A stretch of 64,000 nucleotides of DNA from IMGVR_UViG_3300028676_000003:248001-312000; one strand, 5' to 3'; counted from the stretch's first letter, positions 3,005-63,394 are shown. Numbers and translations: made by a program. The notes: a model not told the origin generated them from the sequence alone.

Positions 3005-4429
3005 ATGAAAATTAAACAAATTCTTGATGAAATCGCTGGTTTCAGTGGTAAATTGGATAAAGCGAAAGCCTTAACCAAATATAAAGACAATCAATTATTA
3101 AAAGATGTGATTTATCTTGCGCATTCGCCTAGGATTAAATTCTTTATTAAACAAATACCTGAGTATCAGTTCATCGAAGCAACAACTTCACTTGAAGACG
3201 CTTTAAATGACTTAAAACAAATCTCCGACAGATTTTACACAGGTGCGGCCGCTACAGAATTCCTTTTAGGTTTACTATCTTATACGGACCCTGATGATGC
3301 TTACGTAATTGAACGTATCATTGATAAAAATCTTAAGATAGGAATGGACACAGGTATCAATAAGGTAATCCCTAAATTGATTGAAGAAACTCCTTATCAA
3401 GGTGCTACATCATTCTCAGAGAAGGGTGCATCTAAGTTATTAGATAGAAAATCTAGAACTGATAAAAATGGAGTTACAAGTCATGTGATTTCACAGATTA
3501 AAGCTGATGGTTCTTACCGTAATGCAATCATAATTGATGGAAAGGTAGAACTCTTATCAAGACAAGGAGAAGTTTCAACTCTTACAGGTGCCAAGTTCTT
3601 AGATGAACTAGCTCAAATGCCTGACTGTGTTCTAAATGGTGAACTTACTGTTGATGGAATAGAAAACCGTGCAATTGCAAACGGAGTTGTTTCTAGCATC
3701 ATGGATATCACTCAGAAAGCAGAAGAAAGAGGTGAAGTAGAAACAGCTAAGAAAATCAAAGCCTTTACTGAAAAACACGGTGATATGGCAGAAATGATTA
3801 ATAGGTTACGCTTCACGGTTTGGGATATGATTAGTGTAGATGAATACTTAAAAGCAAGTTCAGATTTTCCATATTTGAACCGTTTTACTGGTCTTCAAAC
3901 ACTTTTGATTGAAAAAGCTTTCACAAATATTGAATTGATTGAAACTCTTTTTATTGACTCTTATGAAGAAGCAATGAATCATTTCTTAGACGCTCAAAAA
4001 AGAGGTCTTGAAGGAACAATCATCAAATCAAGTACTGCTGGTTGGAAAGATGGGAAACCAACTTACCAAATCAAAATGAAACTTGAAATGGATATGGACT
4101 TAAGAATCATCGGATTCAACTATGGTACCAAAGGTACTAAGAATGAGCATGTTATTAGTGTTCTACAGTTGGAAAGTGAAGATGGGTTATTGAAGACTAA
4201 TCCTGGTGGAATGACTGAGGCTATGATGGCTGATATCACTGAAAGACAAGATGAACTAATGGGAACAATCGTTCAAATTAGATGTTGCGGGTTATCTCAA
4301 ACAGATAAAGGTTGGTCAACACAACACCCAAGTATTGTTGAACTAAGAACAGATAAAGACTCTTGTGACACACTTGAATCTTGTATCGCTATTGAGAATA
4401 TGGCAAAAACACTAAACGTAAAAAAATAA
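3005..4429 (+). CDS. ATP-dependent DNA ligase (T4 gp30-like)
   Basis: QIKADG (motif I), LNGEL, FTVWD, EGTIIK and IKMK, with a C-terminal OB fold ending HP....R.DK. ATG at 3005 chosen over the upstream TTG. Confidence 0.9.
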   Translation: MKIKQILDEIAGFSGKLDKAKALTKYKDNQLLKDVIYLAHSPRIKFFIKQIPEYQFIEATTSLEDALNDLKQISDRFYTGAAATEFLLGLLSYTDPDDAYVIERIIDKNLKIGMDTGINKVIPKLIEETPYQGATSFSEKGASKLLDRKSRTDKNGVTSHVISQIKADGSYRNAIIIDGKVELLSRQGEVSTLTGAKFLDELAQMPDCVLNGELTVDGIENRAIANGVVSSIMDITQKAEERGEVETAKKIKAFTEKHGDMAEMINRLRFTVWDMISVDEYLKASSDFPYLNRFTGLQTLLIEKAFTNIELIETLFIDSYEEAMNHFLDAQKRGLEGTIIKSSTAGWKDGKPTYQIKMKLEMDMDLRIIGFNYGTKGTKNEHVISVLQLESEDGLLKTNPGGMTEAMMADITERQDELMGTIVQIRCCGLSQTDKGWSTQHPSIVELRTDKDSCDTLESCIAIENMAKTLNVKK

Positions 4430-8997: not shown

Positions 8998-10284
8998 ATG
9001 ATAACAAACGAGAATGGTTTAAGATATGCTAAATTGATGCACGTTTCAGTTGATAACGGTCATACAGATAATAGCAATAAAGTTTATATCATGGAAGAAC
9101 TTTCCAATGGTACAATCAAATGTGAATACGGTAGAGTCGGTAATTCGATGGCCGTAGATATCAAACCCGCAAGCAAATGGGATGCAACCTATAAGCAGAA
9201 AACAAGCAAAACGAAGGGTTACACTGATGTAACTGAGTTTATGGCTGAACCTGTTGTAGATGCCGCTAAACCTTCAGGTAACAACCTGATTGATGATATT
9301 CCTGATGCTCTTGTTAAAGAACTTATTAAACGTTTAAGCGACTTCGCAAACAAATCGATTCAACAAAACTATAAGGTAACTCAAGATGCAGTATCTGAGG
9401 CCCAAGTAGTTGCGGCTCAAGCTTTATTAACTAGAATTACAACAACAGTTGCAGTTGGAGTTAGTAAAAATGACTTGAATGAAATGCTTATGCAATTATA
9501 TACGATAATCCCTCGTAACATGAGAAATGTTAAGGATTATTTGTTAGATGAAATCAAAACTGCCGATGATGTAAATCAAGCATTAGAGTTCTTGAATAAA
9601 GAACAAGCTACTCTTGATACAATGGCTGGTCAAGTTGATTTAATAAAGAAACAGAAGCCTGTAGTTGATACTGAAACCAAAGAAGTGAAACCATCAACAT
9701 ATACTATTCTTGACCAAATGGGTATTACAGCTGAGGTTGTAAATGATGCTCCAACTATCAAGATGGTAAGAGATATGCTTGAAGGACATGGTAGAAAACT
9801 TCACAGAGTCTACGCAATTACCAATAAGAAATCACAACCGCTTTACGATACCAAATTGGATTCAAGCAAAAACAAATTGGTTGAACACTTGTTCCACGGT
9901 TCAAGAAATGCCAATTGGTTTAACATTCTTCAAACTGGTCTTATGATTAGACCTTCGGGAGCTGGTTATAATGGTTCTATGTTTGATGATGGTATCTACT
10001 TCGCTAACGATGCAGATAAATCAATGGGTTACACCGATGGTGGTCGTTGGGCAGGTGGTGGAAACGCAAGTTACACTTACTTAGGTGTATTTAGCGTTCA
10101 CTTAGGAAACCAATTACACGTTCATAGACATGATTCTTCATGTTACAAAATTGGAACCAAGTGTAGAAACGAGGGTTATGATTCGGTTTATGCTCACAAA
10201 GGAGCTTCACTTAGAAAAGATGAGTTAATTATTTATAATTCTGCTCAGTGTACTGTTAAATATTTAGTAGAACTTAAAAATTAA
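8998..10284 (+). CDS. PARP-family ADP-ribosyltransferase (WGR + regulatory + catalytic domains)
   Basis: N-terminal NKVY...EYGRVG...KGY (WGR), LYTIIP (regulatory), then LFHGSR..N...IL..GL, GSMFDDGIYFA....KS.GY and DELIIY (H-Y-E triad). Confidence 0.9.
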   Translation: MITNENGLRYAKLMHVSVDNGHTDNSNKVYIMEELSNGTIKCEYGRVGNSMAVDIKPASKWDATYKQKTSKTKGYTDVTEFMAEPVVDAAKPSGNNLIDDIPDALVKELIKRLSDFANKSIQQNYKVTQDAVSEAQVVAAQALLTRITTTVAVGVSKNDLNEMLMQLYTIIPRNMRNVKDYLLDEIKTADDVNQALEFLNKEQATLDTMAGQVDLIKKQKPVVDTETKEVKPSTYTILDQMGITAEVVNDAPTIKMVRDMLEGHGRKLHRVYAITNKKSQPLYDTKLDSSKNKLVEHLFHGSRNANWFNILQTGLMIRPSGAGYNGSMFDDGIYFANDADKSMGYTDGGRWAGGGNASYTYLGVFSVHLGNQLHVHRHDSSCYKIGTKCRNEGYDSVYAHKGASLRKDELIIYNSAQCTVKYLVELKN

Positions 10285-23424: not shown

Positions 23425-23428
23425 CTAA

Positions 23429-23507
23429 AAGATAGTTTCAGCAAGCAAACGGTTAAAAATTTGTCTCATAAACAAACTGAGTGGTTCAATCCCACAAAAC
23501 TATCTTG
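23429..23507 (+). ncRNA. CAGCAA-stem element (skipping-rope-like) enclosing a Met(CAT) anticodon arm and a T arm
   Basis: AAGATAGTT.CAGCAA ... TTTGT-CTCATAA-ACAAA, GTGG-TTCAATC-CCAC ... AACTATCTT-G. Confidence 0.6.
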
Positions 23508-23512
23508 AATTT

Positions 23513-23617: not shown

Positions 23618-24886
23618 ATGGAAAATACAGAATATGTCTGTGTAATGTTCCCTTATCCTTCAGGAGATGGATTACATGTTGGGCATGTCTATAACTACGC
23701 AATCGTCGATAGTTATTGCCGATGGAAACGTTACAATAAAATTCCAGTCTTTCAACCATTTGGATATGATTCATTTGGATTGCCAGCGGAAAACTACGCA
23801 AAAAAGGTCGGTAGAGACCCAAAAGAAGTCACTTACGAAAATATCGCAAAGTTCCGTAAACAAATGGAACGAATGAACACTCAATATGAAGAATTATTAG
23901 TTACATCTGATGAATCTTACTATGTATGGAGTCAAAGATTATTTACTGAATTACATAGCAGAGGGTTAGCCTACCAAAAGATGGGTCCTGTAAATCATTG
24001 TTCAAGCTGTGAAACAGTCTTGGCTAATGAACAAGTTAAGGACGACCATTGTGAAAGATGTGGTACAAGAGTAGAAATCAAAGATTTAAACCAATGGTAT
24101 TTCAAAATTACTGACTATAAGCAACGATTAATTGATAACTTGGATAAGATTGATTATCCTGAGAAAACAAAGAAACAGCAATTGCATTGGTTAGAGAACT
24201 TAAATGATTGGTGTGTTTCAAGACAGCGAAAATGGGGAACTCCAATACCGTTGATTGATTCAGAAGACACCTTAGATACATTCGTTGATAGTTCATTCTA
24301 TTTTTTAAGATACTTGGACCCAAATAACTTAGAAGAATTGGTTGATATCAATAAAGCTAAGCAAGTTGACTTATATGTTGGTGGAAACGAACATGCTTGT
24401 ATGCACTTGATTTATGCTAGGTTTATCACGATGTTCTTACATGATTGTGGTTATATCCCTTTTGATGAGCCTTTTAAGAAGGTAATTCACCAAGGAATGA
24501 TTACTCATAATGGAGAAAAAATGTCCAAGTCAAAAGGCAACGTAATAAATCCTGATGATTATGACCCTGATGAATTGAGGTTATATTCAATGTTTATCGG
24601 CCATTATTTTGACGGTGGAGATTGGGATGATTCAAAGATTAGCGGAATTAGACGTTTTATTGGAAGATTTGGTAAATGGACAAATGAATCTACTCAAGAA
24701 GGTGAAACTATTGACTTAACAGCATTTAAAGAGACTATTAATGGTTATGTAATATCGTTTAAGTTCAATAAGGTTGTTAGTACATTCATGGAGTTTTACA
24801 ACAAGAATAAGAACAAAACATTAAGTGTATCAACAGCTAACGATTTGATTGAAATCTTACGTGTGTTTGCACCGAGTTTTAAATAA
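23618..24886 (+). CDS. leuS: minimal leucyl-tRNA synthetase (no CP1 editing domain, truncated C-terminus)
   Basis: MFPYPSG.GLHVGH, GYDSFGLPAEN, Zn knuckle, DWCVSRQR.WGTPIP, DTFVDSS.YFLRY, GG.EHA.MHL.YARF and KMSKS; only 422 aa. Confidence 0.9.
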   Translation: MENTEYVCVMFPYPSGDGLHVGHVYNYAIVDSYCRWKRYNKIPVFQPFGYDSFGLPAENYAKKVGRDPKEVTYENIAKFRKQMERMNTQYEELLVTSDESYYVWSQRLFTELHSRGLAYQKMGPVNHCSSCETVLANEQVKDDHCERCGTRVEIKDLNQWYFKITDYKQRLIDNLDKIDYPEKTKKQQLHWLENLNDWCVSRQRKWGTPIPLIDSEDTLDTFVDSSFYFLRYLDPNNLEELVDINKAKQVDLYVGGNEHACMHLIYARFITMFLHDCGYIPFDEPFKKVIHQGMITHNGEKMSKSKGNVINPDDYDPDELRLYSMFIGHYFDGGDWDDSKISGIRRFIGRFGKWTNESTQEGETIDLTAFKETINGYVISFKFNKVVSTFMEFYNKNKNKTLSVSTANDLIEILRVFAPSFK

Positions 24887-30911: not shown

Positions 30912-31059
30912 GGGAATGTACGTTCAGCGGTCCGATTGGCTCTTAGGAGATGGTTTAAAACAATTGGGAAGTGTGTCAAGAAATTGATTGGGTAAAAACA
31001 CTATCAGAACGACTCCCGTGAAGGGGAGAAAGTCGCAGGTTCGAATCCTGTCGTTCCTA
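30912..31059 (+). ncRNA. tRNA-like RNA with an ~80-nt D-loop and a 6-nt anticodon loop
   Basis: GGGAATG/CGTTCCT acceptor, CGTTC/GAACG D stem, CTCCC-GTGAAG-GGGAG, T arm TTCGAAT. Confidence 0.6.
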
Positions 31060-31362: not shown

Positions 31363-31364
31363 CA

Positions 31365-31420
31365 AGAGACTGTTACTAATTTATAGGACTCCGAGTGAGG
31401 GGAAGCGTAGAATTAGAATT
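31365..31420 (+). repeat. inter-tRNA motif, copy 1 (AGACTGTT..TAATTYATAG...GCGTAGAATTA)
   Basis: Further copies at 52482-52545 and 52826-52881. Confidence 0.75.
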
Positions 31421-31423
31421 TTT

Positions 31424-31731: not shown

Positions 31732-31862
31732 GGAAATGTTACCCCAAAGCATGAGATTAATCAGAATGCGAGTCTATCAATGATAACGAAACCTTGATAG
31801 ATTTAGGAATAAGGGTACCTCTAATGGGATTTCGTTTGCAGGTTCGAGTCCTGCCATTTCCG
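31732..31862 (+). ncRNA. tRNA-like RNA with an expanded interior
   Basis: Perfect acceptor GGAAATG/CATTTCC and T arm GCAGG-TTCGAGT-CCTGC, with about 100 nt between and no clean anticodon arm. Confidence 0.55.
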
Positions 31863-36357: not shown

Positions 36358-36847
36358 ATTAGTTGTACCTTTGTAATGTAATAAAAATTAAACTATGAGA
36401 AATTTAAAAAAGCGATTTTTTCAATATTTGGCCGATTATATAATCGAGAGGTTACGATTCGAGTTGAATAGTCAATTCTATAATGAGAAGGTTTTTTACT
36501 TCTATTTAGAAATGGGAATATGTTTAGATTTTTATTGTACGGAGTATTTTAACGTAGAATTAGACTAAAAAAAAAATAAGTTTTAGTTGCAAGTTAAAAA
36601 AACGTTTCGTACCTTTGTTAAAGAAAAAGAAATTAGGTTAGGTTAGGTTAATAAATTTTGGTTTTTGGTTTTGAATTGCGTTTGTCACAAGTAAATGTTA
36701 ATTGATTTCGGTAAGATTAGCATTCGTCATGCTTGTGACGTTTTTAGATTGAATTAGGTTAAACTCGTTAGTTCTATTAGGGCCTGTCGTCATGGCAGAT
36801 AATCATAGGGAATTACGTCAGAACGTCCTACAGACGTAACTAACACT

Positions 36848-38529: not shown

Positions 38530-38589
38530 TCGTTGACAAAAAGAAAGGTCGTCTAAATCGTAATTGGTTTAGACACCACAAGGTATAAA

Positions 38590-38722
38590 AAAATTCGTTC
38601 AGCATAAAAAGCAATTCCAAACTTCGGGTCGTAGGTTCGAGTCCTACCCTCTCCACTAGGGTTATAATCGGAGAGGTAGCTCGGTCGGATTAGAGCAGAA
38701 GTCAGCAAAAAAAGCAATTTTG
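38590..38722 (+). ncRNA. circularly permuted tRNA (3' half precedes 5' half) flanked by 18-nt direct repeats
   Basis: 3' half ACTTC-GGGTC-GTAGG-TTCGAGT-CCTAC-CCTCTCC-A (38621-38655), 14-nt linker, 5' half GGAGAGG-TA-GCTC...GAGC-A-GAAGT (38670-38702). Confidence 0.75.
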
Positions 38723-38731
38723 ATACCCCAT

Positions 38732-38850
38732 ATAGTAGTCGTCTAGTGGACAAAGACACCGCCCCTGTATTCGTGTATGAGGTTCGACTCCTCTTTAGCA
38801 GTGGTGGTATGACGTAGGTGGAAACATTGGTTCAAATCCAATCTGCTGTA
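38732..38850 (+). ncRNA. Glu/Asp-type tRNA body with an ~50-nt insertion in the anticodon loop
   Basis: ATAGTAG/CTGCTGT, D arm GTCTAGTGGACAAAGAC; the CCGCC/GGTGG stem encloses a second T-arm (GAGG-TTCGACT-CCTC). Confidence 0.6.
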
Positions 38851-38884
38851 CAAAAGGTTCCTCTTGCCTTACAAGAGAATAAAA

Positions 38885-39013
38885 AAGATTATTTCAGCAA
38901 TCAAACAAAAAAAATCTATTTGAAAGAGAGCGGAGGGGTTCGACTCCCCATTTGTCTATAAGAGGTATGACAATTTGTTGTAACGGTAGCACTAATAAAA
39001 AAAATTAATCTTG
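38885..39013 (+). ncRNA. CAGCAA-stem element enclosing a permuted Gln(TTG)-like tRNA
   Basis: AAGATTA...CAGCAA, anticodon arm, GGGG-TTCGACT-CCCC, TTGTC-linker-GACAA, D arm TTGTAACGGTAGCA, closing TAATCTT-G. Confidence 0.6.
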
Positions 39014-46055: not shown

Positions 46056-46404
46056 TAGAGCCATTTGGTTCTTTGAGTTGATACTTGGTAAAGGAATAAG
46101 GGGCCTAGCATTTTGGCCCTTTATCTTTGTACCATCGACAACAGTCGTTGATGAGGTTCTGCTAAATCACGAACGTATTCATTTAAAGCAACAACTCGAA
46201 ATGCTGATTATACCGTTTTATATATGGTATTTGATTGCATTAAGGCGAAAGGGTTATATGGGTATTAGCTTTGAAAAAGAAGCATACGCCAATGAGAGAG
46301 ACTTAGGTTATTTAACCAAAAGAAAGAATTATTCATTTTTAAAATATCAAAATGAAAATAGAAATAAACAAAATAAAAACAGTACCAAAGGGTTTAGGTT
46401 TTAA
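46039..46404 (+). CDS. HExxH-motif protein
   Basis: LNHERIHLKQQ ... ISFEKEAY. Confidence 0.65.
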   Translation: MLIVSDRAIWFFELILGKGIRGLAFWPFIFVPSTTVVDEVLLNHERIHLKQQLEMLIIPFYIWYLIALRRKGYMGISFEKEAYANERDLGYLTKRKNYSFLKYQNENRNKQNKNSTKGFRF

Positions 46405-47527
46405 TTTCTGCGTTTACGGTGAACCATCTGAAGAAATTCAAAAATGGTGTAAGTATTGGGATTTTAAAACAGAACCATCAGGTCCATATACCAATATTAT
46501 CCTTACAGATGATGTTGACATTAAAAATATCTTTGTTGGTCCTAAGAAATACCATTATATTGATGGTTTTAGCCCAAATCTTAACAAGAACCTACATGTA
46601 GGTCACTTATCAAATCTTGTATTAGCAAATGCGTTCCAACACTTGGGTCTTGGAGATGAATTTATCTCGATATTTGGTGATACGCTAAATGGTGAGGTTA
46701 CCAAAGATGAGGCTTATTACAATTTCCTTAAAATGACCAAGTTTTTTGGTTATAAGGTTGATAAAGAGTATTTTGCTTCTGAAATGAAGCTTGATGAAAA
46801 GCTTTTAAAAGACGGCCAAGGTGACTATGAAGGTTCAAAGGTATTTGACTTAGAAGATGAACAAATCGTAGGTATTAAATCCAGCGGAGCAACAACATAC
46901 TTCTATCAAGACGTAGCACTAGCTAATGAATTGAGTGCTTCTACCTTGTATCTAACTGGCTTGGAGCAAGAAAATCATTTTAATTCGCTTAAGAAGTTAT
47001 TTCCAAATAACAATCATATCGGTCTTGGACTTGTTTATCTTGATGGTAAAAAGATGTCTAGCAGTGAAGGAAATATCATTTATATGAATGAGTTCATTCA
47101 TGGACTTATGGAAAAGTTTAATCATGATGCTGGTGTTGTAGCTAATATTATTATTGGACAAATCCTTAAATCTGAGCCAAAGTCAAAGAAAACAATTGAT
47201 TCTAGTCTTATAGATAATCCAAGATTATCATTAGGATTATACTTGAGCTACACGTTAGCACATGTTAAGAGTTGTGGTGTCACAACCAAGCAGATTTATA
47301 AGTATCAATCTAAAAAGTTACAATTTGCTGAATTAAGAGCTAAAACAAACTTATCACCAAATGTCTTATTTGATGAATTGGTGAGCCATTGTAAACATAT
47401 CAACGCTTTATATGAGACTCATTATATCAAGGGGAATGAAGAGAACATTGAGTTGTTTTCTAATTTGATTTCTGACTTGGAGTTGGGTATGTTGAGAGTG
47501 GGTATGTATTCAGTAGAAAAAGTTTAA
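46352..47527 (+). CDS. argS: arginyl-tRNA synthetase (compact)
   Basis: FSPNLNK.LHVGH, KS.G.TTY..QD, EQ..HF, KMSSSEG, YL.Y..A; C-term LGM...G. Confidence 0.85.
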   Translation: MKIEINKIKTVPKGLGFNFCVYGEPSEEIQKWCKYWDFKTEPSGPYTNIILTDDVDIKNIFVGPKKYHYIDGFSPNLNKNLHVGHLSNLVLANAFQHLGLGDEFISIFGDTLNGEVTKDEAYYNFLKMTKFFGYKVDKEYFASEMKLDEKLLKDGQGDYEGSKVFDLEDEQIVGIKSSGATTYFYQDVALANELSASTLYLTGLEQENHFNSLKKLFPNNNHIGLGLVYLDGKKMSSSEGNIIYMNEFIHGLMEKFNHDAGVVANIIIGQILKSEPKSKKTIDSSLIDNPRLSLGLYLSYTLAHVKSCGVTTKQIYKYQSKKLQFAELRAKTNLSPNVLFDELVSHCKHINALYETHYIKGNEENIELFSNLISDLELGMLRVGMYSVEKV

Positions 47528-50910: not shown

Positions 50911-51024
50911 CAAACACAAAACGGGTTAACCTCTGCGAACAGAAAGTACGAGGATGGAACAATTGGAAAGATATCGCTAGTTGCAAAGGGTTCGATTCCC
51001 TATAACCTGACAAAAGAATTAATC

Positions 51025-52476: not shown

Positions 52477-52481
52477 CGAGA

Positions 52482-52545
52482 AGAGACTGTTATTAATTCA
52501 TAGAACACCATACTTAGTAAGTACTGGAAGCGTAGAATTAAAAAT
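52482..52545 (+). repeat. inter-tRNA motif, copy 2
   Basis: AGAGACTGTTATTAATTCATAG...GAAGCGTAGAATTAA. Confidence 0.75.
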
Positions 52546-52547
52546 TA

Positions 52548-53116: not shown

Positions 53117-53188
53117 TGTCAAGTAGTTTAATTGAGAAAACTCCCTGCGTTGGGCGGGGCGATTTGGGTTTGAATCCCGATTTGACAG
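53117..53188 (+). tRNA. Gln-like tRNA with an atypical anticodon loop (CGTTGGG)
   Basis: TGTCAAG/TTTGACA-G; CCCTG-CGTTGGG-CGGGG. Confidence 0.55.
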
Positions 53189-53197
53189 CAAAGATAA

Positions 53198-53257
53198 AAA
53201 ATGATTTCAGCAAATATTATCATCAAACTTTTAATTTGAAACAGATATATCATTTTG
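53198..53257 (+). ncRNA. CAGCAA-stem element enclosing a Lys(TTT) anticodon arm
   Basis: AAAATGAT..CAGCAA ... TCAAA-CTTTTAA-TTTGA ... ATCATTTT-G. Confidence 0.6.
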
Positions 53258-53265
53258 TTCTTTTT

Positions 53266-53344
53266 GGGTCTATGGCAGAGCGGTCGATTGCGACAGACTG
53301 TAAATCTGTTATTCCACACCGTGGTTCGAATCCACGTGGGCCCA
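53266..53344 (+). tRNA. tRNA-Tyr(GTA)
   Basis: ACAGA-CTGTAAA-TCTGT. Confidence 0.9.
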
Positions 53345-54451: not shown

Positions 54452-54524
54452 GCGAGTGTAGCTCAGTTGGCAGAGCACCTGATTACCAATTAGGTTGTCG
54501 TGGGTTCGAATCCCATCACTCGCT
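54452..54524 (+). tRNA. tRNA-Gly(ACC), A34
   Basis: GCG-start, U73 Gly body; CCTGA-TTACCAA-TTAGG. Confidence 0.85.
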
Positions 54525-54562
54525 CTCTTGACTTTTTGGTACCATCTAGTATATTTATATAC

Positions 54563-55219
54563 ATGGGAAGAAAAGTAAAAAATATACATTACATTTATAA
54601 AATAACGTGTAATGTGACAGGAAGGTATTATGTAGGAATGCGTAGTACTTGTAAAGAAGATGATAATTACATGGGTTCAGGAAAAGTTCTCAGATATTCA
54701 ATACGAAAGTATGGTGTTGAAAACCATACAAAAGAAATTCTGAGTTATCATGAAACACGTGAGTTATTAGTTGAAGCTGAGATATTAGCTATTACTGCTG
54801 ATATGATTACAGATAAGAACTGTATGAATATTAGATTAGGTGGTTCAGGTGGTTTCACAAGTGAAGAAGCGAAAAAAGGTAGACTAGCGACAGATAAGAT
54901 TTTATTTGAAAAATTTGGTGATGATTTTAGAATAATAATAAACCAAAATTATCATAATAATATGTCTGAAACTGAAAAAATTGCTTTTAGTAATAAAGTA
55001 AAAGTTGGTCAACAAAGTAATGGCTATAATAATATAACTTTCAAGAATAAAAGGCATTCAGATAAAACAAAACAATTAATGTCTAAACCAAAAAATATTG
55101 GTGAAACAAATTCACAATTCGGAACTTGTTGGATAACTAAGGAAGGCATTAATAAGAAGATTAAGAAAGAAGACCTTGATACATTTATCACTGATGGATG
55201 GGTTCAAGGAAGAAAATAA
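54563..55219 (+). CDS. GIY-YIG homing endonuclease (Seg-like, NUMOD3-type tail)
   Basis: YIYKIT..VTGRYYVG, YMGSG, E, N.R.GG.GG, KRHSDKTK.LMS, WV.GR. Confidence 0.85.
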   Translation: MGRKVKNIHYIYKITCNVTGRYYVGMRSTCKEDDNYMGSGKVLRYSIRKYGVENHTKEILSYHETRELLVEAEILAITADMITDKNCMNIRLGGSGGFTSEEAKKGRLATDKILFEKFGDDFRIIINQNYHNNMSETEKIAFSNKVKVGQQSNGYNNITFKNKRHSDKTKQLMSKPKNIGETNSQFGTCWITKEGINKKIKKEDLDTFITDGWVQGRK

Positions 55220-55224
55220 CATAA

Positions 55225-55345
55225 GGGGGTATTAAAATATTGGCAAACGGCATTCTGCAATTTAAAAAAGAATGATTACTGCAAAATTCAAAAAAACAAT
55301 CTGTAACATTGAAATTAATACGTGGTTCGATTCCCGTTGCCCCCA
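55225..55345 (+). ncRNA. Tyr(GTA)-like tRNA interrupted between the D and anticodon arms by a CTGCAA-stem element with its arms in reversed order
   Basis: GGGGGTA/TGCCCCC-A acceptor; insert CATTCTG...AGAATG.TTACTGCAA; CAAT-CTGTAAC-ATTG; T loop TTCGATT. Confidence 0.6.
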
Positions 55346-55356
55346 CAAAACTTTTT

Positions 55357-55409
55357 TAAAAATAACTCATCATTTATTTGGTGGGTTATTTTTTTTTGCA
55401 TACCTTTGT
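55357..55409 (+). terminator. terminator-promoter cassette closing array 3
   Basis: Near-identical to 39241-39292. Confidence 0.75.
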
Positions 55410-56161
55410 AATCTAAATATAAGACAATTATCCCTAGTTTAAAATATACAGCATTTCAAATTCTATCATATGTTAAAAGTAATACATTTGATACCAAAGA
55501 ACGTTTATCTCAACACATTGAGTATTCACTAGAATCTATCAATGAACATACTAAGAGACCACAAAAAAAAGATTTTCTCTTAAACCAAGCGAGAGAAAGT
55601 GGTAGGACCCATTTTAAATTAATAGGTAAGGTCAACGATGGTGGTCTTCAATTGATGGAGTGGTGTGACGAAGCTTTCAACTTTGACGGTATGTGTTCGG
55701 ATATTGAAATTATCAAAACACATAAAGATGGTGAATATATGAAGAGAACATATACTATTGATGAATTACCTGAAGTAATAGATAGAGCCTTGAGTTGGTT
55801 CAATTCAATGAGAGCAAGAGAAGATTTTTGGGATGAATATTTACACATTTTAGCTATATGATAGAACCTACAAAATTAAATAAAGGAATATTTACGTTTT
55901 TCGTAAAGAATGGCTTAGACCATTCAGAAATGCATAGAATCTTAAAGTTTTATGCCAAGGAACATCTTGATAGAACCCTACCTACTAGAAGACACCTTAA
56001 ATGGTATGCTAGTGTTAGCGAAAAAGCTGGTGCGGACTTCGAGAATTTCAAAAAATGTTTTAATAAACACAAGCGAAGAAACAGAAGAAGAGCACAAACT
56101 TACGATGAGTGGTTTGTTGAATCTAGCCTTGATGGAACTTTCGCTTATAACGGCTCAGCAG

Positions 56162-57926: not shown

Positions 57927-58310
57927 ATGGTAGCAATATTAATAACATACAATAAATGGCTTACAGAGTCTAAGTTATTTGTAGTAAAAGAAGTGAAGAT
58001 GTTCGCAGGAATTGGACTTAAAGAGGCCAAGGATTTTGTGGACGAAATTGATAATAACATCCGTTTGGGTAAAACTATTTCTATTGGAAAAGGGAGTGAA
58101 ACACACGAAATACTAAAATTCTTAAAAGAGAAAGACTTACTTTCATTTGTGGAAGCTCATAAGACTGGGCTAAAGAAAGAAAATCATCGTGTGGTTGCTA
58201 AGCGTAGCAAGGAATATGATATAGCTAGGTCTTGGTTCGATTCTTTGCACCCAAAGAAACAAGCTATGATTCAAACGCTAATAAACGAAGAAAATGGCAT
58301 TTCAGGATAA
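57927..58310 (+). CDS. paralog 3, ribosomal L7/L12-CTD-like
   Basis: KL.VVKEVK.FAGIGLKEAKDFVD. Confidence 0.65.
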   Translation: MVAILITYNKWLTESKLFVVKEVKMFAGIGLKEAKDFVDEIDNNIRLGKTISIGKGSETHEILKFLKEKDLLSFVEAHKTGLKKENHRVVAKRSKEYDIARSWFDSLHPKKQAMIQTLINEENGISG

Positions 58311-58992
58311 ATACGGAAGAACCCTACATTTTGATTTTAGTCCTGGAACTACATCGGATGATAGAATAAATACAGAATGGAGAGAGCAGGTACAGAAGTT
58401 TCCTAAGCTGATTCATACTGAGAAACTAGACGGAGAAAACTCTTGTCTATCTCAATATGGTGTCTTTGCTAGGTCACATGCGGCACCTACACTACATCCA
58501 TGGGCTAACCACTTGAAAGAGAAGCAATCAGTAATTCAACATGACCTAAAAAGCATGGATTTTGAAATATTTGGTGAAAACCTATATGCTTTACACTCAA
58601 TCATTTACCCTGAACTTACAGCACATTTCTATGTGTTTGGAATTAGGGTCCTTGATAAGTGGCTTTCATGGGAAGAAACCAAGCAATGGGCTGGATTCTT
58701 TGATTTTCAAGTGGTTCCCGAATTGGGAATTCAAGATACAACTGAACCTGAACTAATAAAATCAAGGGTACTAGAATTAGGTAGTCAGCCAAGCGTATTT
58801 GGTTCACAACAAAATAATACTGACCCGCTTATTGATTGTACACGTGAAGGTATTGTAAGTAGGAATATAGACGAATACACAGTTGAAGGTTTCAAAGAGA
58901 ATATCTTCAAATATGTGAGAAAAGACCACGTTCAAACGGACGTTCATTGGAGTAAAACAATAACAAGAGCAAGACTAATACACGAATACTAA
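58294..58992 (+). CDS. RNA ligase family protein
   Basis: KY.RT.H..FSPG..SDD, TEKLDGEN, GENLYA.HSI.Y, REGIV, FKYVR..HVQTD.HW. Confidence 0.85.
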   Translation: MAFQDKYGRTLHFDFSPGTTSDDRINTEWREQVQKFPKLIHTEKLDGENSCLSQYGVFARSHAAPTLHPWANHLKEKQSVIQHDLKSMDFEIFGENLYALHSIIYPELTAHFYVFGIRVLDKWLSWEETKQWAGFFDFQVVPELGIQDTTEPELIKSRVLELGSQPSVFGSQQNNTDPLIDCTREGIVSRNIDEYTVEGFKENIFKYVRKDHVQTDVHWSKTITRARLIHEY

Positions 58993-60978: not shown

Positions 60979-62091
60979 ATGTGGAAGTTTAAGTATTACG
61001 ATATAGAGAAGGGTCCTGATTGGACAGCAATTGAAAGGAATTGCGAGTGGTTTCGTGATATGAAAGACGTTCCACAAGACAAGATATGGCATGCCGAAGG
61101 TGATGTTCAAATCCATACAAAAATGGTTTGTGAAGCACTTATCCAATTGTCTGAATTTCAAGAACTTAGTGAAGAAAAGAAACACATTATGTTTACAGGT
61201 GCGCTTATGCACGACATAGAGAAACGTTCTACAACTACAACTGAGTTCAAGAATGACAGAGAGTGTATTATTGCTCCTAAGCATGCTGAAAGAGGTGAGA
61301 AAACAGCAAGAGAAATTCTTTATATGGATTTTGATTGTCCTTATCATTCTAGAGAACAAATCTGTAAGATTGTTAAGTGGCACGGGAAGCCTCTACACGA
61401 TGCATCTAATAAGACACTTGCTAGACTAGCAACACAAGTTCAATTACCATTTCTAGCAATGATTGCAAAGGCCGATATTCTTGGCCGTATTTGTACTGAT
61501 GCTGAAGAACACTTGGAAAGAATTGAATTTTTCCAAATGCAAGCAGAAGACATTGGTTGTTGGGGTCGTACAATGTACTTTCAAAATCAATTGATTGAAT
61601 ATGAAGCTTTAAAAACGGGTAATTTATATTCACATCGTTTTGATGATACGAAGTTTGAGGTAATGATGATGTCCGCAATCCCAGGTTCAGGCAAAGACCA
61701 CTACGTTAAGAATAACCTTCAAGGGTGGCCTGTAATCAGTCTTGACGATATTAGAGCTGAGCTTAAGGTTAAGCCTTTAGATAAAAAGGGTAACGGACAA
61801 GTGATTCAACTAGCTAAAAAGAGAGCTAAGGAACTAATGGCTAAGCATACAAATTTTGTATGGAATGCCACAAATATAACTCAACAAATGAGAGGTCAGT
61901 TGATTGAGTTATTTGAAGAATATGGTGGAAAGGTAACAATTGTTTATATTGAGGTCCCTTATAAGACTCTTATCAAGCAAAATAACGATAGAGAAGCGAT
62001 AGTTCCTCAAAGTGTTATTGAAAAGATGATTAGAAAATGGGAACCACCTATTCGTGAAGAAGCATATAGAATATTAACTTTTACAAATTAA
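60979..62091 (+). CDS. HD phosphohydrolase + P-loop (AAA_33) kinase fusion, RNA end-healing type
   Basis: PQD..WHAEGDV..HT, LMHDIEK, AD..GR; then IPGSGKD, ISLDDIR, VWNATN.....R. Confidence 0.85.
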   Translation: MWKFKYYDIEKGPDWTAIERNCEWFRDMKDVPQDKIWHAEGDVQIHTKMVCEALIQLSEFQELSEEKKHIMFTGALMHDIEKRSTTTTEFKNDRECIIAPKHAERGEKTAREILYMDFDCPYHSREQICKIVKWHGKPLHDASNKTLARLATQVQLPFLAMIAKADILGRICTDAEEHLERIEFFQMQAEDIGCWGRTMYFQNQLIEYEALKTGNLYSHRFDDTKFEVMMMSAIPGSGKDHYVKNNLQGWPVISLDDIRAELKVKPLDKKGNGQVIQLAKKRAKELMAKHTNFVWNATNITQQMRGQLIELFEEYGGKVTIVYIEVPYKTLIKQNNDREAIVPQSVIEKMIRKWEPPIREEAYRILTFTN

Positions 62092-62821: not shown

Positions 62822-63394
62822 ATGAATATTAAACAAAGACTTAGAGAGGTTTTATTAGAAGCCGAAAAAAAGGACCACAAACGAGAGTATGGTTGCCTTA
62901 TGGTTTTCTTAGATGTTGACAAGAAAGCTTGGAAAGAATTACAAGATATGATTGACAAGGACGACTTGTATACAGAAAAAGACGATGATGGTTATGGTCT
63001 AGAAGATAAACCACACGTTACAGTACTTTACGGACTTCATGGAGAGATTGAAGATAAGGAATTAGAGGTTGAAATCAATAAGATTACAGAACCTAAGATT
63101 TCTTTTAAGAATATTTCAACATTTGAGGCCGATAAGTATGATGTATTGAAATTTGATGTATCGAGTAGCGACTTGGTTAAACTTAACAAGAAATTCAAGG
63201 AATTTCCACATACTAGTACGTTCCCTAATTATCATCCTCATTGTACAATTGCTTATCTGAAAAAGGGTGTTGCTGAAAAGTACATCAAAAAGGCTAAGGA
63301 TTTGGTTAAGATGGATATGGAACCTGAAAAGGTTGTTTATTCTAAGGTTGATGGAACTGAGAAGAATTATAAAATAAATAAAAAAGAGGCTTAA
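62822..63394 (+). CDS. 2H phosphoesterase, T4 gp57B/Acb1-like
   Basis: PHVTVLYG and YHPHCTIAY (two HxT motifs), with YDVLK between them. Confidence 0.75.
   Translation: MNIKQRLREVLLEAEKKDHKREYGCLMVFLDVDKKAWKELQDMIDKDDLYTEKDDDGYGLEDKPHVTVLYGLHGEIEDKELEVEINKITEPKISFKNISTFEADKYDVLKFDVSSSDLVKLNKKFKEFPHTSTFPNYHPHCTIAYLKKGVAEKYIKKAKDLVKMDMEPEKVVYSKVDGTEKNYKINKKEA

What the first reader, a model, noticed from the sequence alone, without database searches (positions are those of the whole stretch)
55225..55345. Normal-order tRNA-Tyr carrying the same stem element with swapped arms
The tRNA runs normally, but between the D region and the anticodon arm it has CATTCT-G first and AGAATG..TACTGCAA second, i.e. 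the two arms of the element in reverse order. This is what opening the 38885-type RNA at the acceptor end would give. Inference: both are permutations of one tRNA-plus-helix architecture, so the element may be a processing or ligation signal, or a protein-binding module.
Basis: partly seen in the sequence, partly recalled or inferred. Interest (0 to 1): 0.75.

Follow-up and report, generated by a model that had tools for sequence, protein, structure and literature searches.

The report
Conserved chimeric tRNA-like phage RNA
The flagged stretch is a real, conserved gene for an odd tRNA-shaped RNA of huge soil and freshwater phages, in which the core of a tyrosine-type tRNA is replaced by a rearranged copy of a small "stem plus UUWCWGCAAA box" RNA module that also stands alone in the same tRNA gene arrays; its function is unknown.

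Summary
Window 55225-55345 has a 7-bp acceptor stem, a T arm, a GTA anticodon arm and, in place of a D stem, the hairpin CATTCT/AGAATG followed by ATTACTGCAAA. ARAGORN and Rfam do not call it a tRNA. It is not a decayed gene. I found 12 copies in 6 lineages of related huge phages. All four helices are kept, with 10 compensatory pairs (96.6% of cells paired against 37-52% for slid controls).

The insert is a circular permutation of a free-standing module of about 60 nt. That module starts with AAG, has a covarying 7-8 bp closing stem, then the box UUWCWGCAAA, a variable interior and a CUG(U) end. It occurs at window 53196-53258, at genome 225235-225299, in short form at window 38886-38916, and four times in tandem in another phage.

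Several features argue against an ordinary elongator tRNA-Tyr: there is no D stem, and some lineages have a T-stem bulge, G55, C33 or a GUG anticodon. The splicing and mini-tmRNA readings were tested and not supported.

My best reading is a tRNA-array-processed tRNA mimic that displays an anticodon arm and a protein-binding box. The function is inferred, not shown. The free modules resemble dictyostelid Class I RNAs, but score below the Rfam threshold.

The parts
55225..55231 (+). acceptor stem, 5' strand (GGGGGTA)
   Evidence: Pairs with 55338-55344. Five of the 7 pairs covary across 12 homologues.
55232..55250 (+). U8-U9 plus a D-loop-like stretch with conserved GG (TTAAAATATTGGCAAACGG); no D stem
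   Evidence: Conserved as TT-RAAATR..GG in all lineages. No supported partner strand was found.
55251..55256 (+). hairpin H, 5' arm CATTCT (followed by a conserved G); corresponds to the 3' strand plus CUG end of the free-standing module
   Evidence: 100% paired with 55269-55274 in 12 of 12 copies. One compensatory pair (CATTTT/AAAATG in L007 and L017).
55257..55268 (+). hairpin loop, variable in length (4-12 nt) and sequence; holds the non-conserved first CTGCAA
   Evidence: Alignments A2 and A3.
55269..55274 (+). hairpin H, 3' arm AGAATG (preceded by AA, giving the module's AAG start)
55275..55285 (+). box ATTACTGCAAA (family consensus GAWTWCWGCAAA), predicted single-stranded
   Evidence: Kept in 12 of 12 family A copies and in all free-standing modules.
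55286..55296 (+). A/C-rich linker, variable in length (about 8-20 nt between the box and the anticodon stem in the family)
55297..55311 (+). anticodon-type stem-loop CAAT-CTGTAAC-ATTG; GTA at 55303-55305
   Evidence: 4-bp stem with one compensatory pair (T-A to A-T). The loop is YYGTRAN; it reads GTG in L007 and L017, and L018 has C33.
55312..55319 (+). short variable region (class I length)
55320..55337 (+). T arm ACG(T)GG-TTCGATT-CCCGT with a 1-nt bulge (T at 55323)
   Evidence: Three of the 5 pairs covary. The bulge is kept in 5 of the 11 distinct copies and absent in the others.
55338..55345 (+). acceptor stem 3' strand TGCCCCC plus discriminator A; no CCA is encoded
55358..55393 (+). intrinsic terminator ending the tRNA array
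54560..55219 (+). GIY-YIG homing-endonuclease ORF inserted between tRNA-Gly(ACC) (54452-54525) and the feature
   Evidence: ORF and weak SegE_GIY-YIG hit. In relative L003 the feature follows tRNA-Gly after 7 nt with no ORF between them.
53196..53258 (+). free-standing module (family B): closing stem AAAATGAT/ATCATTTT, box TTCAGCAAA, stem-loop TCAAA-CTTTTAA-TTTGA (a UUU anticodon arm look-alike), then a GT end; lies between tRNA-Gln and tRNA-Tyr
   Evidence: R2 scores 84.8 bits. Nine copies, 8-bp stem with 5 compensatory pairs and U-G wobbles, 98.2% paired.
   Evidence: Sequence. Weak R2 match over 38884-38978 (20.7 bits, E 0.21).
23427..23508 (+). tRNA(CAU)-like gene in which the box (TTTCAGCAAG) directly follows the acceptor 5' strand
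   Evidence: R2 scores 25.2 bits, E 0.02.

Best explanation
Window 55225-55345 is a functional gene for a tRNA-derived non-coding RNA of 110-122 nt, here called family A. It is neither an ordinary tRNA-Tyr nor a pseudogene. SHOWN: it keeps a tRNA shell made of a 7-bp acceptor stem, a T arm, a 7-nt anticodon-type loop with G34-U35-R36-A37, and discriminator A. Its D stem is replaced by a circularly permuted copy of a module of about 60 nt that also stands alone in the same tRNA arrays. That module consists of an AAG start, a closing stem, the box UUWCWGCAAA, a variable interior and a CUG(U) end. INFERRED: the RNA is transcribed with the tRNA array. It usually lies 2-7 nt after a tRNA, and here it is the last gene before a terminator. 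Its ends are probably cut by the tRNA-processing enzymes, because the acceptor/T-arm minihelix is intact. The mature RNA probably acts as a tRNA mimic rather than a decoder. It would present a Tyr-type (GUR) anticodon arm together with the single-stranded box, which I take to be a protein-binding handle, to a factor that recognises tRNA anticodon loops. The most likely setting is the conflict over tRNA-cleaving host defences, next to the phage's RNA ligase, kinase and 2H-phosphoesterase repair genes. Confidence that this is a selected, structured, chimeric tRNA-like RNA is about 0.9. Confidence in the mimic/decoy mechanism is about 0.3.
For: Conservation and covariation: 12 copies in 6 lineages. 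The acceptor stem, hairpin, anticodon stem and T stem are each 100% paired, with 10 compensatory pairs; the flanks diverge. Array membership: spacers of 2-7 nt after tRNA-Gly or tRNA-Thr in L003, L004, L008, L011, L012, L018, L020 and L025, and a terminator directly downstream here. Not a canonical elongator tRNA: tRNA finders do not call it. It has no D stem. Five of the 11 distinct copies have a T-stem bulge. L008, L007 and L017 have G55, L018 has C33, and L007 and L017 have GUG with discriminator A unchanged. Canonical long-arm tRNA-Tyr genes lie upstream in the same arrays wherever that part of the contig is held. Module identity: R2, built from free-standing copies, hits the inner part of family A (E 0.005 to 2e-4). 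The alignment runs from AAAGAATGAT and the box through the stem-loop. The free-standing modules have a strongly covarying closing stem. Their interiors vary: a UUU anticodon arm look-alike, none, or other hairpins, and there are four in tandem in L041. This pattern suggests a constant handle with variable tRNA-like cargo. Repair genes lie 3-8 kb downstream and are syntenic in relatives: RNA ligase at 58294-58992, HD-kinase at 60979-62091, and a 2H/Acb1-like gene at 62822-63394. Phage tRNAs are already known to counter tRNA-targeting defences (PMC11555353, PMC11464382, PMC10264068; abstracts).
Against: There are no expression, processing or binding data. The only RNA-labelled run held nothing of the feature, and the DNA runs showed the same phage without variants. 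The family is missing from some syntenic relatives (L006, L009, L044), so it is dispensable. No partner protein was identified: the phage has no RRM, TROVE or TGT protein. A decoy would need high abundance, which is unknown. The GUR loop could equally be read as a kept UAA/UGA triplet. The host is not known; a Bacteroidota host is only inferred from TAnnTTTG-type promoter motifs.
Confidence: 0.45

Rival explanations
1. It is a working, if unorthodox, tRNA-Tyr: charged by the host TyrRS and used in translation, for example as a spare that escapes a host nuclease recognising the normal D arm or long variable arm of tRNA-Tyr.
For: The acceptor stem, T loop, G18-G19-like GG, U33, A37 and discriminator A73 are all present, and GUA is kept in 10 of 12 copies. 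The RNA sits in tRNA arrays like a tRNA gene. Phage tRNA-Tyr and tRNA-Lys variants that evade defence nucleases are known (PMC11555353, PMC11464382).
Against: There is no D stem, and about 45 extra nt sit in the tRNA core. Five copies have a bulge in the T stem, where EF-Tu binds (established knowledge). Three copies have G55 in place of the universal U55. L007 and L017 carry a GUG anticodon with no His identity change. The short variable region is unlike bacterial tRNA-Tyr. Two normal tRNA-Tyr genes lie 2 kb upstream.
Confidence: 0.2
2. It is a precursor whose insert is removed, or whose parts are rejoined, by the phage RNA ligase and kinase. This is the reader's processing/ligation-signal reading: a spliced or permuted pre-tRNA.
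For: RNA ligase, polynucleotide kinase and a 2H phosphoesterase are encoded 3-8 kb downstream. The module occurs in both circular orders. In the L012 lineage, 82 of 1035 in-silico excisions give an ARAGORN-callable tRNA-Tyr.
Against: None of 1035 single excisions rescues a cloverleaf in this phage's copy, and none does in L004, L011 or L007. The phage has no tRNA-splicing endonuclease and no RtcB. I saw no bulge-helix-bulge motif by eye. The box and linker are conserved like a functional part, not like an intron.
Confidence: 0.1
3. It works in cis. The tRNA-like fold and the modules would be punctuation or stability elements of the tRNA operon transcript: entry sites for RNase P or Z, or 3'-end protection before the terminator. 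There would be no trans function.
For: It is the last element before a terminator here, as is the module at genome 225235-225299. T4's tRNA cluster transcript likewise ends after the species I RNA gene (PMC2330249).
Against: In L008 and L007 it lies in mid-array. A pure punctuation signal would not need a conserved GUR loop, the box or the hairpin.
Confidence: 0.12
4. It is a miniature tmRNA working with the phage's SmpB. The conserved GCA after the box would be the resume codon, and the UAA/UGA in the loop would be the stop.
For: The phage encodes SmpB. Like a tmRNA, the feature has no D stem. GCA-AAC resembles the start of many tags, and the loop change A36 to G keeps a stop triplet (UAA to UGA). 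In L011, L012 and L007/L017 the GCA is in frame with that stop.
Against: A canonical 375-nt tmRNA is present at genome 223383-223757 (RF00023, 66 bits). No copy has a G3-U70 pair. The frame from GCA to the loop stop is broken in 7 of 12 copies, including this one, and differs between near-identical relatives (L012 against L020 and L025).
Confidence: 0.03
5. It is a decaying tRNA pseudogene or a chance tRNA-like sequence.
For: It is not called by ARAGORN or Rfam, and its single-sequence fold is only 1.8 sd better than shuffles.
Against: Ten compensatory pairs across 6 lineages. The 121 nt are conserved while the flanks diverge.
Confidence: 0.02

Closest known systems
Phage T4 species I and II stable RNAs of the tRNA gene cluster
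   Same: Small non-tRNA RNAs encoded inside a phage tRNA cluster, made from the same precursor as the tRNAs. The transcript terminates after the species I RNA gene, and a GIY-YIG homing endonuclease gene (segB) sits in the cluster (PMC2330249). Here the feature is the last gene before the terminator and a GIY-YIG ORF sits next to it.
   Different: No sequence comparison was possible with these tools. The T4 RNAs are not known to contain a permuted module or an anticodon-arm look-alike. Their function is also unknown.
Dictyostelid Class I RNAs (Rfam RF01414)
   Same: The free-standing phage modules share every architectural feature listed for Class I RNAs in PMC7919456: about 60 nt, an AAG start, a short stem joining the 5' and 3' ends with compensatory changes, a conserved motif right after the 5' stem strand (Rfam consensus CCUUACAGCAAU; phage UUACAGCAAAU or UUUCAGCAAAU), a variable interior and a CUG(U) end. 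The RF01414 model's best hit in each of three phage genomes falls on such a module (33.4, 28.0 and 24.7 bits; E 2.6e-5 to 1.6e-3 per genome).
   Different: All scores are below the gathering score of 41.5. The copy inside the finding is permuted, so its stem does not join the RNA's ends. Class I RNAs are eukaryotic, have their own upstream promoter element and are reported as unique to Dictyostelia. AT-rich composition may inflate the scores. Common descent is not shown.
Circularly permuted tRNA genes (Cyanidioschyzon merolae type; review PMC3978253)
   Same: A tRNA-related gene in which homologous segments occur in a rotated order relative to sister copies.
   Different: Here the tRNA shell is colinear, with the acceptor 5' strand first and the 3' strand last. 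Only the inner module is rotated. There is no bulge-helix-bulge junction and no splicing endonuclease.
Phage counter-defence tRNAs (T5 tRNA-Tyr against retron Eco7; T5 tRNA-Lys against PARIS)
   Same: Phage-encoded tRNA-shaped RNAs with Tyr (GUA) or Lys (UUU) anticodon loops whose value lies in conflicts with tRNA-cleaving defences (PMC11555353, PMC11464382). Family A carries a GUA loop and family B a UUU loop.
   Different: Those are canonical, chargeable tRNAs with point changes. These RNAs lack D stems, and family B also lacks a T arm, so they can hardly decode.
YrlA-type bacterial Y RNAs
   Same: tRNA-like modules joined to a helix in an unusual order. One YrlA-like RNA lies in this window at about 38583-38728 (Rfam 29.3 bits against a gathering score of 69).
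   Different: The finding gives no YrlA hit, is not closed at the acceptor end, and the phage has no Ro/Rsr (TROVE) protein.

Membership tests
canonical elongator tRNA (Rfam RF00005; bacterial tRNA-Tyr) | 7-bp acceptor stem with an unpaired discriminator | tested here: met
   100% paired in 12 copies, 5 covarying pairs, A73 in all.
canonical elongator tRNA (Rfam RF00005; bacterial tRNA-Tyr) | D stem of 3-4 bp closing a D loop | tested here: not met
   RNAalifold predicts none. The GCA/UGC helix is 70.6% paired. The RAAAU/AUUWC pairing is irregular and shows no covariation.
canonical elongator tRNA (Rfam RF00005; bacterial tRNA-Tyr) | regular 5-bp T stem and a T loop with U54-U55-C56 | tested here: inconclusive
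   The stem covaries, but 5 copies including this one have a 1-nt bulge, and 3 copies have G55.
canonical elongator tRNA (Rfam RF00005; bacterial tRNA-Tyr) | recognised by tRNA models | tested here: not met
   No ARAGORN call at default settings. No RF00005 hit even at E up to 10.
canonical elongator tRNA (Rfam RF00005; bacterial tRNA-Tyr) | long (class II) variable arm of bacterial tRNA-Tyr, and an anticodon fixed within the family | tested here: not met
   The variable region is 5-8 nt. The two canonical tRNA-Tyr genes of the array are 80 and 83 nt, consistent with long variable arms. L007 and L017 have GUG.
intron-containing or circularly permuted tRNA gene | excision or rejoining yields a cloverleaf; bulge-helix-bulge junction; splicing endonuclease and ligase available | tested here: not met
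   0 of 1035 excisions are callable in this copy. No PF01974 or PF01139 protein in the phage. The shell is colinear.
tmRNA | G3-U70 pair, a tag reading frame with a fixed resume codon and stop, and an SmpB partner | tested here: not met
   G3-C70 or A3-U70 in all copies. The frame is inconsistent in 7 of 12. SmpB is present, but so is a canonical tmRNA.
Dictyostelid Class I RNA (RF01414) | score at or above the gathering score (41.5 bits) | tested here: not met
   The best phage module scores 33.4 bits. There is no hit on the finding itself.
Dictyostelid Class I RNA (RF01414) | AAG start, stem joining the 5' and 3' ends, motif next to the 5' strand, CUG(U) end | tested here: inconclusive
   All four features are present in the free-standing modules. 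In the finding the same parts are present but rotated, so the stem is an internal hairpin.
YrlA / Y RNA | match to the family model and a Ro (TROVE) partner | tested here: not met
   No YrlA hit in 55100-55450. No TROVE protein in the genome.
   No such family appears among hits at E up to 10 (55100-55450) or up to 5 (53150-53300; L041 modules). I did not verify that the family is in release 15.
T4 species I/II-type tRNA-cluster RNAs | non-tRNA stable RNA co-transcribed with a phage tRNA cluster | not testable with these tools
   The position fits (PMC2330249). No transcript data were available.

The most novel reading that the evidence does not exclude
Huge phages carry a previously undescribed family of small 'handle plus cargo' RNAs. 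The handle is an AAG start, a closing stem, the UUWCWGCAAA box and a CUG(U) end. The cargoes are tRNA parts: a Lys-type anticodon arm, possibly a T arm, a whole tRNA, or none. The finding would be a natural tRNA scaffold carrying a circularly permuted handle. The handle would be the same RNA-protein recognition device as in dictyostelid Class I RNAs, whether by descent or transfer between soil phages or bacteria and amoebae, or by convergence on one RNA-binding fold. It would be used by the phage to feed tRNA look-alikes to host factors.
Probability: 0.2. Interest if true: 0.85.

Novelty: new variant of a known kind. Interest (0 to 1): 0.7.

Why it matters
Phage tRNA clusters have held unexplained non-tRNA RNAs since T4's species I and II. 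This is a second, comparatively well-defined example, with two related families, covariation support and a clear modular logic. It shows that tRNA finders miss conserved tRNA-derived genes in huge phages. It provides a natural case of an RNA module that works in two circular orders, which constrains how the module is recognised: by the helix plus the adjacent single strand, not by free ends. If the anticodon-arm cargoes are decoys, it would add a new layer to the tRNA-centred arms race between phages and bacterial defences. If the likeness to Class I RNAs reflects a shared protein-binding device, an RNA class thought unique to social amoebae would gain a testable relative.

Tried and rejected
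(1) Natural variation and RNA evidence from public runs. The other peat and soil runs hold the identical phage at low depth. They show no variants in the feature, no junction reads at the feature, and no RNA coverage of it.
(2) INPHARED phages and IMG/VR exact patterns from this copy returned only the same phage.
(3) Paralogue search within the genome by blastn found no close paralogue of the whole feature.
(4) k-mer enrichment in tRNA spacers: CWGCAA is not enriched as a k-mer, and naive hairpin-plus-CWGCAA scans are swamped by chance hits.
(5) Mini-tmRNA idea: rejected.
(6) Phage TyrRS partner: the class Ib synthetase found is a TrpRS.
(7) Phage TGT, Ro/TROVE, RRM, EndA and RtcB: none present.
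(8) Extra helices sought by pairwise column covariation: nothing beyond the four helices; the apparent extra pairs track lineage.
(9) Prokaryotic genome scan for the module: 56 pattern matches, none a credible module. The single R2 hit, L101, lies in coding sequence.
(10) Rfam at permissive thresholds gave no informative family for the finding itself.
(11) Literature searches found no description of this family.
(12) I did not run complex prediction. No specific partner protein was nominated by the evidence, so a score would have had little meaning.

Full report
WHAT IS THERE. The window is part of a single 368,549-bp, 33.6% GC virus record from peat metagenomes. ARAGORN finds 62 tRNAs in the genome, 40 of them in the window. 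A 7-bp acceptor stem is formed by GGGGGTA and TGCCCCC, followed by discriminator A. The T arm has a perfect TTCGATT loop, but its stem needs a bulged T. The anticodon arm is CAAT-CTGTAAC-ATTG, with GTA as the anticodon. About 64 nt lie between position 8 and the anticodon stem, where a tRNA has 19. This stretch holds the hairpin CATTCT/AGAATG, followed by ATTACTGCAAA and an A-rich linker.

Neither ARAGORN at default settings nor the Rfam tRNA model (even at E up to 10) calls it. With relaxed settings ARAGORN offers a different, poor reading: tRNA-Leu(TAA) with a 41-nt intron. The single-sequence fold is only 1.8 sd better than shuffles. On one sequence alone the feature could therefore pass for a decayed tRNA.

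COMPARISON SETTLES THAT IT IS REAL. The HD-kinase gene 5.7 kb downstream has many homologues. Contigs encoding the closest ones are syntenic and carry the feature. A covariance model (R1) and a degenerate DNA pattern drawn from the first alignments then recovered 12 copies, 11 besides this phage's own record, in six lineages from peat, soil, freshwater and other metagenomes.

- All four helices are 100% paired.
- Ten pairs show changes on both sides: five in the acceptor stem, three in the T stem, one in the hairpin (CATTCT/AGAATG to CATTTT/AAAATG) and one in the anticodon stem.
- Overall 96.6% of cells pair, against 37-52% when partners are slid.
- No shuffle of 500 reaches the observed covariation.
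- Flanking DNA diverges freely.
- The hairpin loop varies from 4 to 12 nt. The CTGCAA inside it is peculiar to this phage.
- The box after the hairpin, GAWTWCWGCAAA, is kept in every copy.

IT IS NOT AN ORDINARY tRNA-Tyr. No D stem is supported. The GCA/UGC helix from the single fold is 70.6% paired, and a possible RAAAU/AUUWC pairing is irregular and does not covary. The T-stem bulge is kept in five copies and absent in the rest. Three copies have G at position 55, one has C33, and L007 and L017 have GUG instead of GUA while keeping discriminator A. The variable region is short, unlike bacterial tRNA-Tyr. Canonical long-arm tRNA-Tyr genes lie upstream in the same arrays wherever that part is held. 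What is constant in the loop is G34-U35-R36-A37.

THE INSERT IS A ROTATED COPY OF A FREE-STANDING MODULE. The box with part of the hairpin's 3' arm (AATGATTTCAGCAAA) recurs in the spacer between tRNA-Gln and tRNA-Tyr at window 53196-53258 and at the orthologous place in eight other contigs. There the order is AAAG, 5' strand (AGAATGAT-like), box, linker, a stem-loop TCAAA-CTTTTAA-TTTGA that looks like a tRNA-Lys(UUU) anticodon arm, a short connector, the 3' strand (ATCATTCT-like) and G(T). The 8-bp closing stem has five compensatory pairs and U-G wobbles, with 98.2% of cells paired (model R2).

R2 was built only from these copies. It also hits several other places:
- the inner part of the finding (55267-55331, E 0.005; the L011 copy E 2e-4);
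- a further copy at genome 225235-225299, after tRNA-Met and before a terminator, with no stem-loop inside;
- a tRNA(CAU)-like gene at window 23427-23508, where the box directly follows the acceptor 5' strand;
- weakly, window 38884-38978.

In another phage (L041) four modules stand in tandem behind a sigma-70-like promoter, each with a different interior.

In the free modules the helix closes the element. In the finding its 3' strand with the trailing G comes first and its AAG-5' strand comes second, joined by a short loop. This is what a junction between two tandem modules would look like. The best comparison partner, however, is 53196-53258 rather than 38885.

CONTEXT. The RNA behaves as an array member. 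It starts 2-7 nt after a tRNA (mostly tRNA-Gly) in eight contigs. Here a GIY-YIG homing-endonuclease ORF has been inserted between tRNA-Gly(ACC) and the feature, judged against L003. A terminator follows at 55358-55393. Downstream, syntenic in relatives, lie an RNA ligase, BtpA, an HD-polynucleotide kinase and a 2H/Acb1-like phosphoesterase. Some syntenic relatives lack the feature (L006, L009, L044).

RIVALS TESTED.
- Splicing or ligation. None of 1035 single excisions between position 8 and the anticodon stem gives an ARAGORN-callable tRNA for this copy, and none does for L004, L011 or L007. Only the L012 lineage does, in 82 of 1035. The phage has no splicing endonuclease and no RtcB.
- Mini-tmRNA. 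The phage has SmpB, and the loop triplet U35-R36-A37 is always UAA or UGA. But a canonical tmRNA is present at genome 223383-223757, no copy has G3-U70, and the frame from the conserved GCA to the loop stop is broken in 7 of 12 copies.
- Y RNA. A YrlA-like, acceptor-closed tRNA-like RNA does exist at about 38583-38728. The finding gives no such hit, and the phage has no Ro protein.
- Skipping-rope. There is no Rfam hit.
- Pseudogene. Excluded by covariation.

AN UNEXPECTED RESEMBLANCE. At permissive thresholds, the Rfam model for dictyostelid Class I RNAs puts its best hit in each of three phage genomes exactly on a free-standing module. The scores are 33.4 bits at genome 225238-225298 (E 2.6e-5 for the genome), 28.0 bits on the first L041 module and 24.7 bits in the record of L044. 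All are below the gathering score of 41.5.

Class I RNAs are described as 42-65 nt. They have an AAG start and a short stem joining the ends, with compensatory changes. A conserved 11-nt motif lies next to the 5' strand, the remainder is variable, and the end is CUGU. They are bound by an RRM protein and are reported as unique to Dictyostelia (PMC7919456). The phage modules show each of these architectural features. I file this as a resemblance, not membership. AT-rich composition may help the score, and descent is unproven.

HOW IT MOST LIKELY WORKS. Shown: a selected, structured, chimeric tRNA-like RNA with an intact acceptor/T-arm minihelix, a conserved GUR loop, a conserved helix and a conserved single-stranded box. 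Inferred: it is cut out of the array transcript by the tRNA-processing enzymes and accumulates as a tRNA mimic that does not decode. The helix-plus-box handle is shared with modules whose cargoes are tRNA parts, which suggests one common binding factor. The anticodon-arm cargoes (Tyr-type here, Lys-type in the free module) suggest targets that read anticodon loops. The neighbouring RNA repair genes suggest the setting is host tRNA-cleaving defence, where phage tRNA-Tyr and tRNA-Lys are already known players (abstracts; the details of those systems are from my own knowledge). I put about 0.9 on the structural statement and about 0.3 on this mechanism. A working but unorthodox tRNA-Tyr (0.2), a cis-acting punctuation element (0.12) and a spliced or ligated precursor (0.1) remain open.

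NOVELTY. No Rfam family covers it. No paper found in four of the five literature searches describes it; the fifth was for Class I RNAs. A scan of one genome per prokaryotic species found no credible module. It is best ranked as a new variant (a new family) within a known kind, the tRNA-derived non-coding RNAs of phage tRNA clusters. The rotated module and the Class I likeness are the surprising elements.

Noticed in passing
window 38583-38728: YrlA-like, acceptor-closed (permuted) tRNA-like RNA. The order is T arm, CCTCTCC/GGAGAGG hairpin, D arm, with an ACTTC/GAAGT 'anticodon' stem and an outer stem GGTAT..AAAATT/AATTTT..ATACC. It is flanked by near-repeats CAGCA(T/A)AAAAAGCAATT. Rfam YrlA scores 29.3 bits (gathering score 69). 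The phage has no Ro/TROVE protein.
   Followed up: partly
window 38732-38850: 119-nt Rfam tRNA hit (36.7 bits) with a 51-nt insertion in the anticodon region that itself contains a T-arm-like GAGGTTCGACTCCTC. ARAGORN does not call it.
   Followed up: no
window 30912-31059, 31732-31862, 50922-51010 and others: Many T-arm motifs with matching 7-bp acceptor strands lie outside called tRNAs. These are long (89-148 nt) tRNA-like candidates that the tRNA finders miss.
   Followed up: no
genome 223383-223757 and 356939-357364 (outside the window): The phage encodes a canonical tmRNA (RF00023, 66 bits; missed by ARAGORN) and its own SmpB (182.7 bits).
   Followed up: yes
genome 228804-228879 (outside the window): tRNA with anticodon CTA (called tRNA-Pyl by ARAGORN). 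This is a possible amber suppressor, which hints at stop-codon recoding.
   Followed up: no
L004:3062-3612: In one relative the tRNA-Gly(ACC) gene is split near the anticodon region by an insertion of about 475 bp carrying a PDDEXK_5 ORF (3156-3572). This may be an intron or an endonuclease insertion in a tRNA gene.
   Followed up: partly
window 54560-55219: A GIY-YIG homing-endonuclease ORF is inserted between tRNA-Gly(ACC) and the feature; it is absent at this place in L003. Similar ORFs end directly upstream of the family B module in L012.
   Followed up: partly
L041:2072-2430: Four stem-plus-box modules stand in tandem, with different interiors, behind a TTGACA..TATAAT promoter in an unrelated AT-rich viral contig (IMGVR_UViG_3300042330_000854). 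A tRNA follows.
   Followed up: partly
window about 31363-31423 and 52477-52547: A second repeated spacer element lies upstream of tRNA-Asp and tRNA-Pro (AGAGACTGTTA..., then GGAAGCGTAGAATTA). CGTAGAA is the most enriched 7-mer in tRNA spacers.
   Followed up: no
window 55404-55411 and elsewhere (for example 36580-36625): Recurrent TTGCAA..N..TACCTTTG motifs fit the Bacteroidota TAnnTTTG promoter type. This is the only hint to the host.
   Followed up: no
window 8998-10284, 23618-24886, 46352-47527, 57927-58310: A protein with a PARP catalytic domain, a truncated LeuRS-like protein (422 aa), a weak ArgRS-like protein and a ribosomal L7/L12-like protein. A TrpRS lies at genome 359761-360735.
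   Followed up: partly
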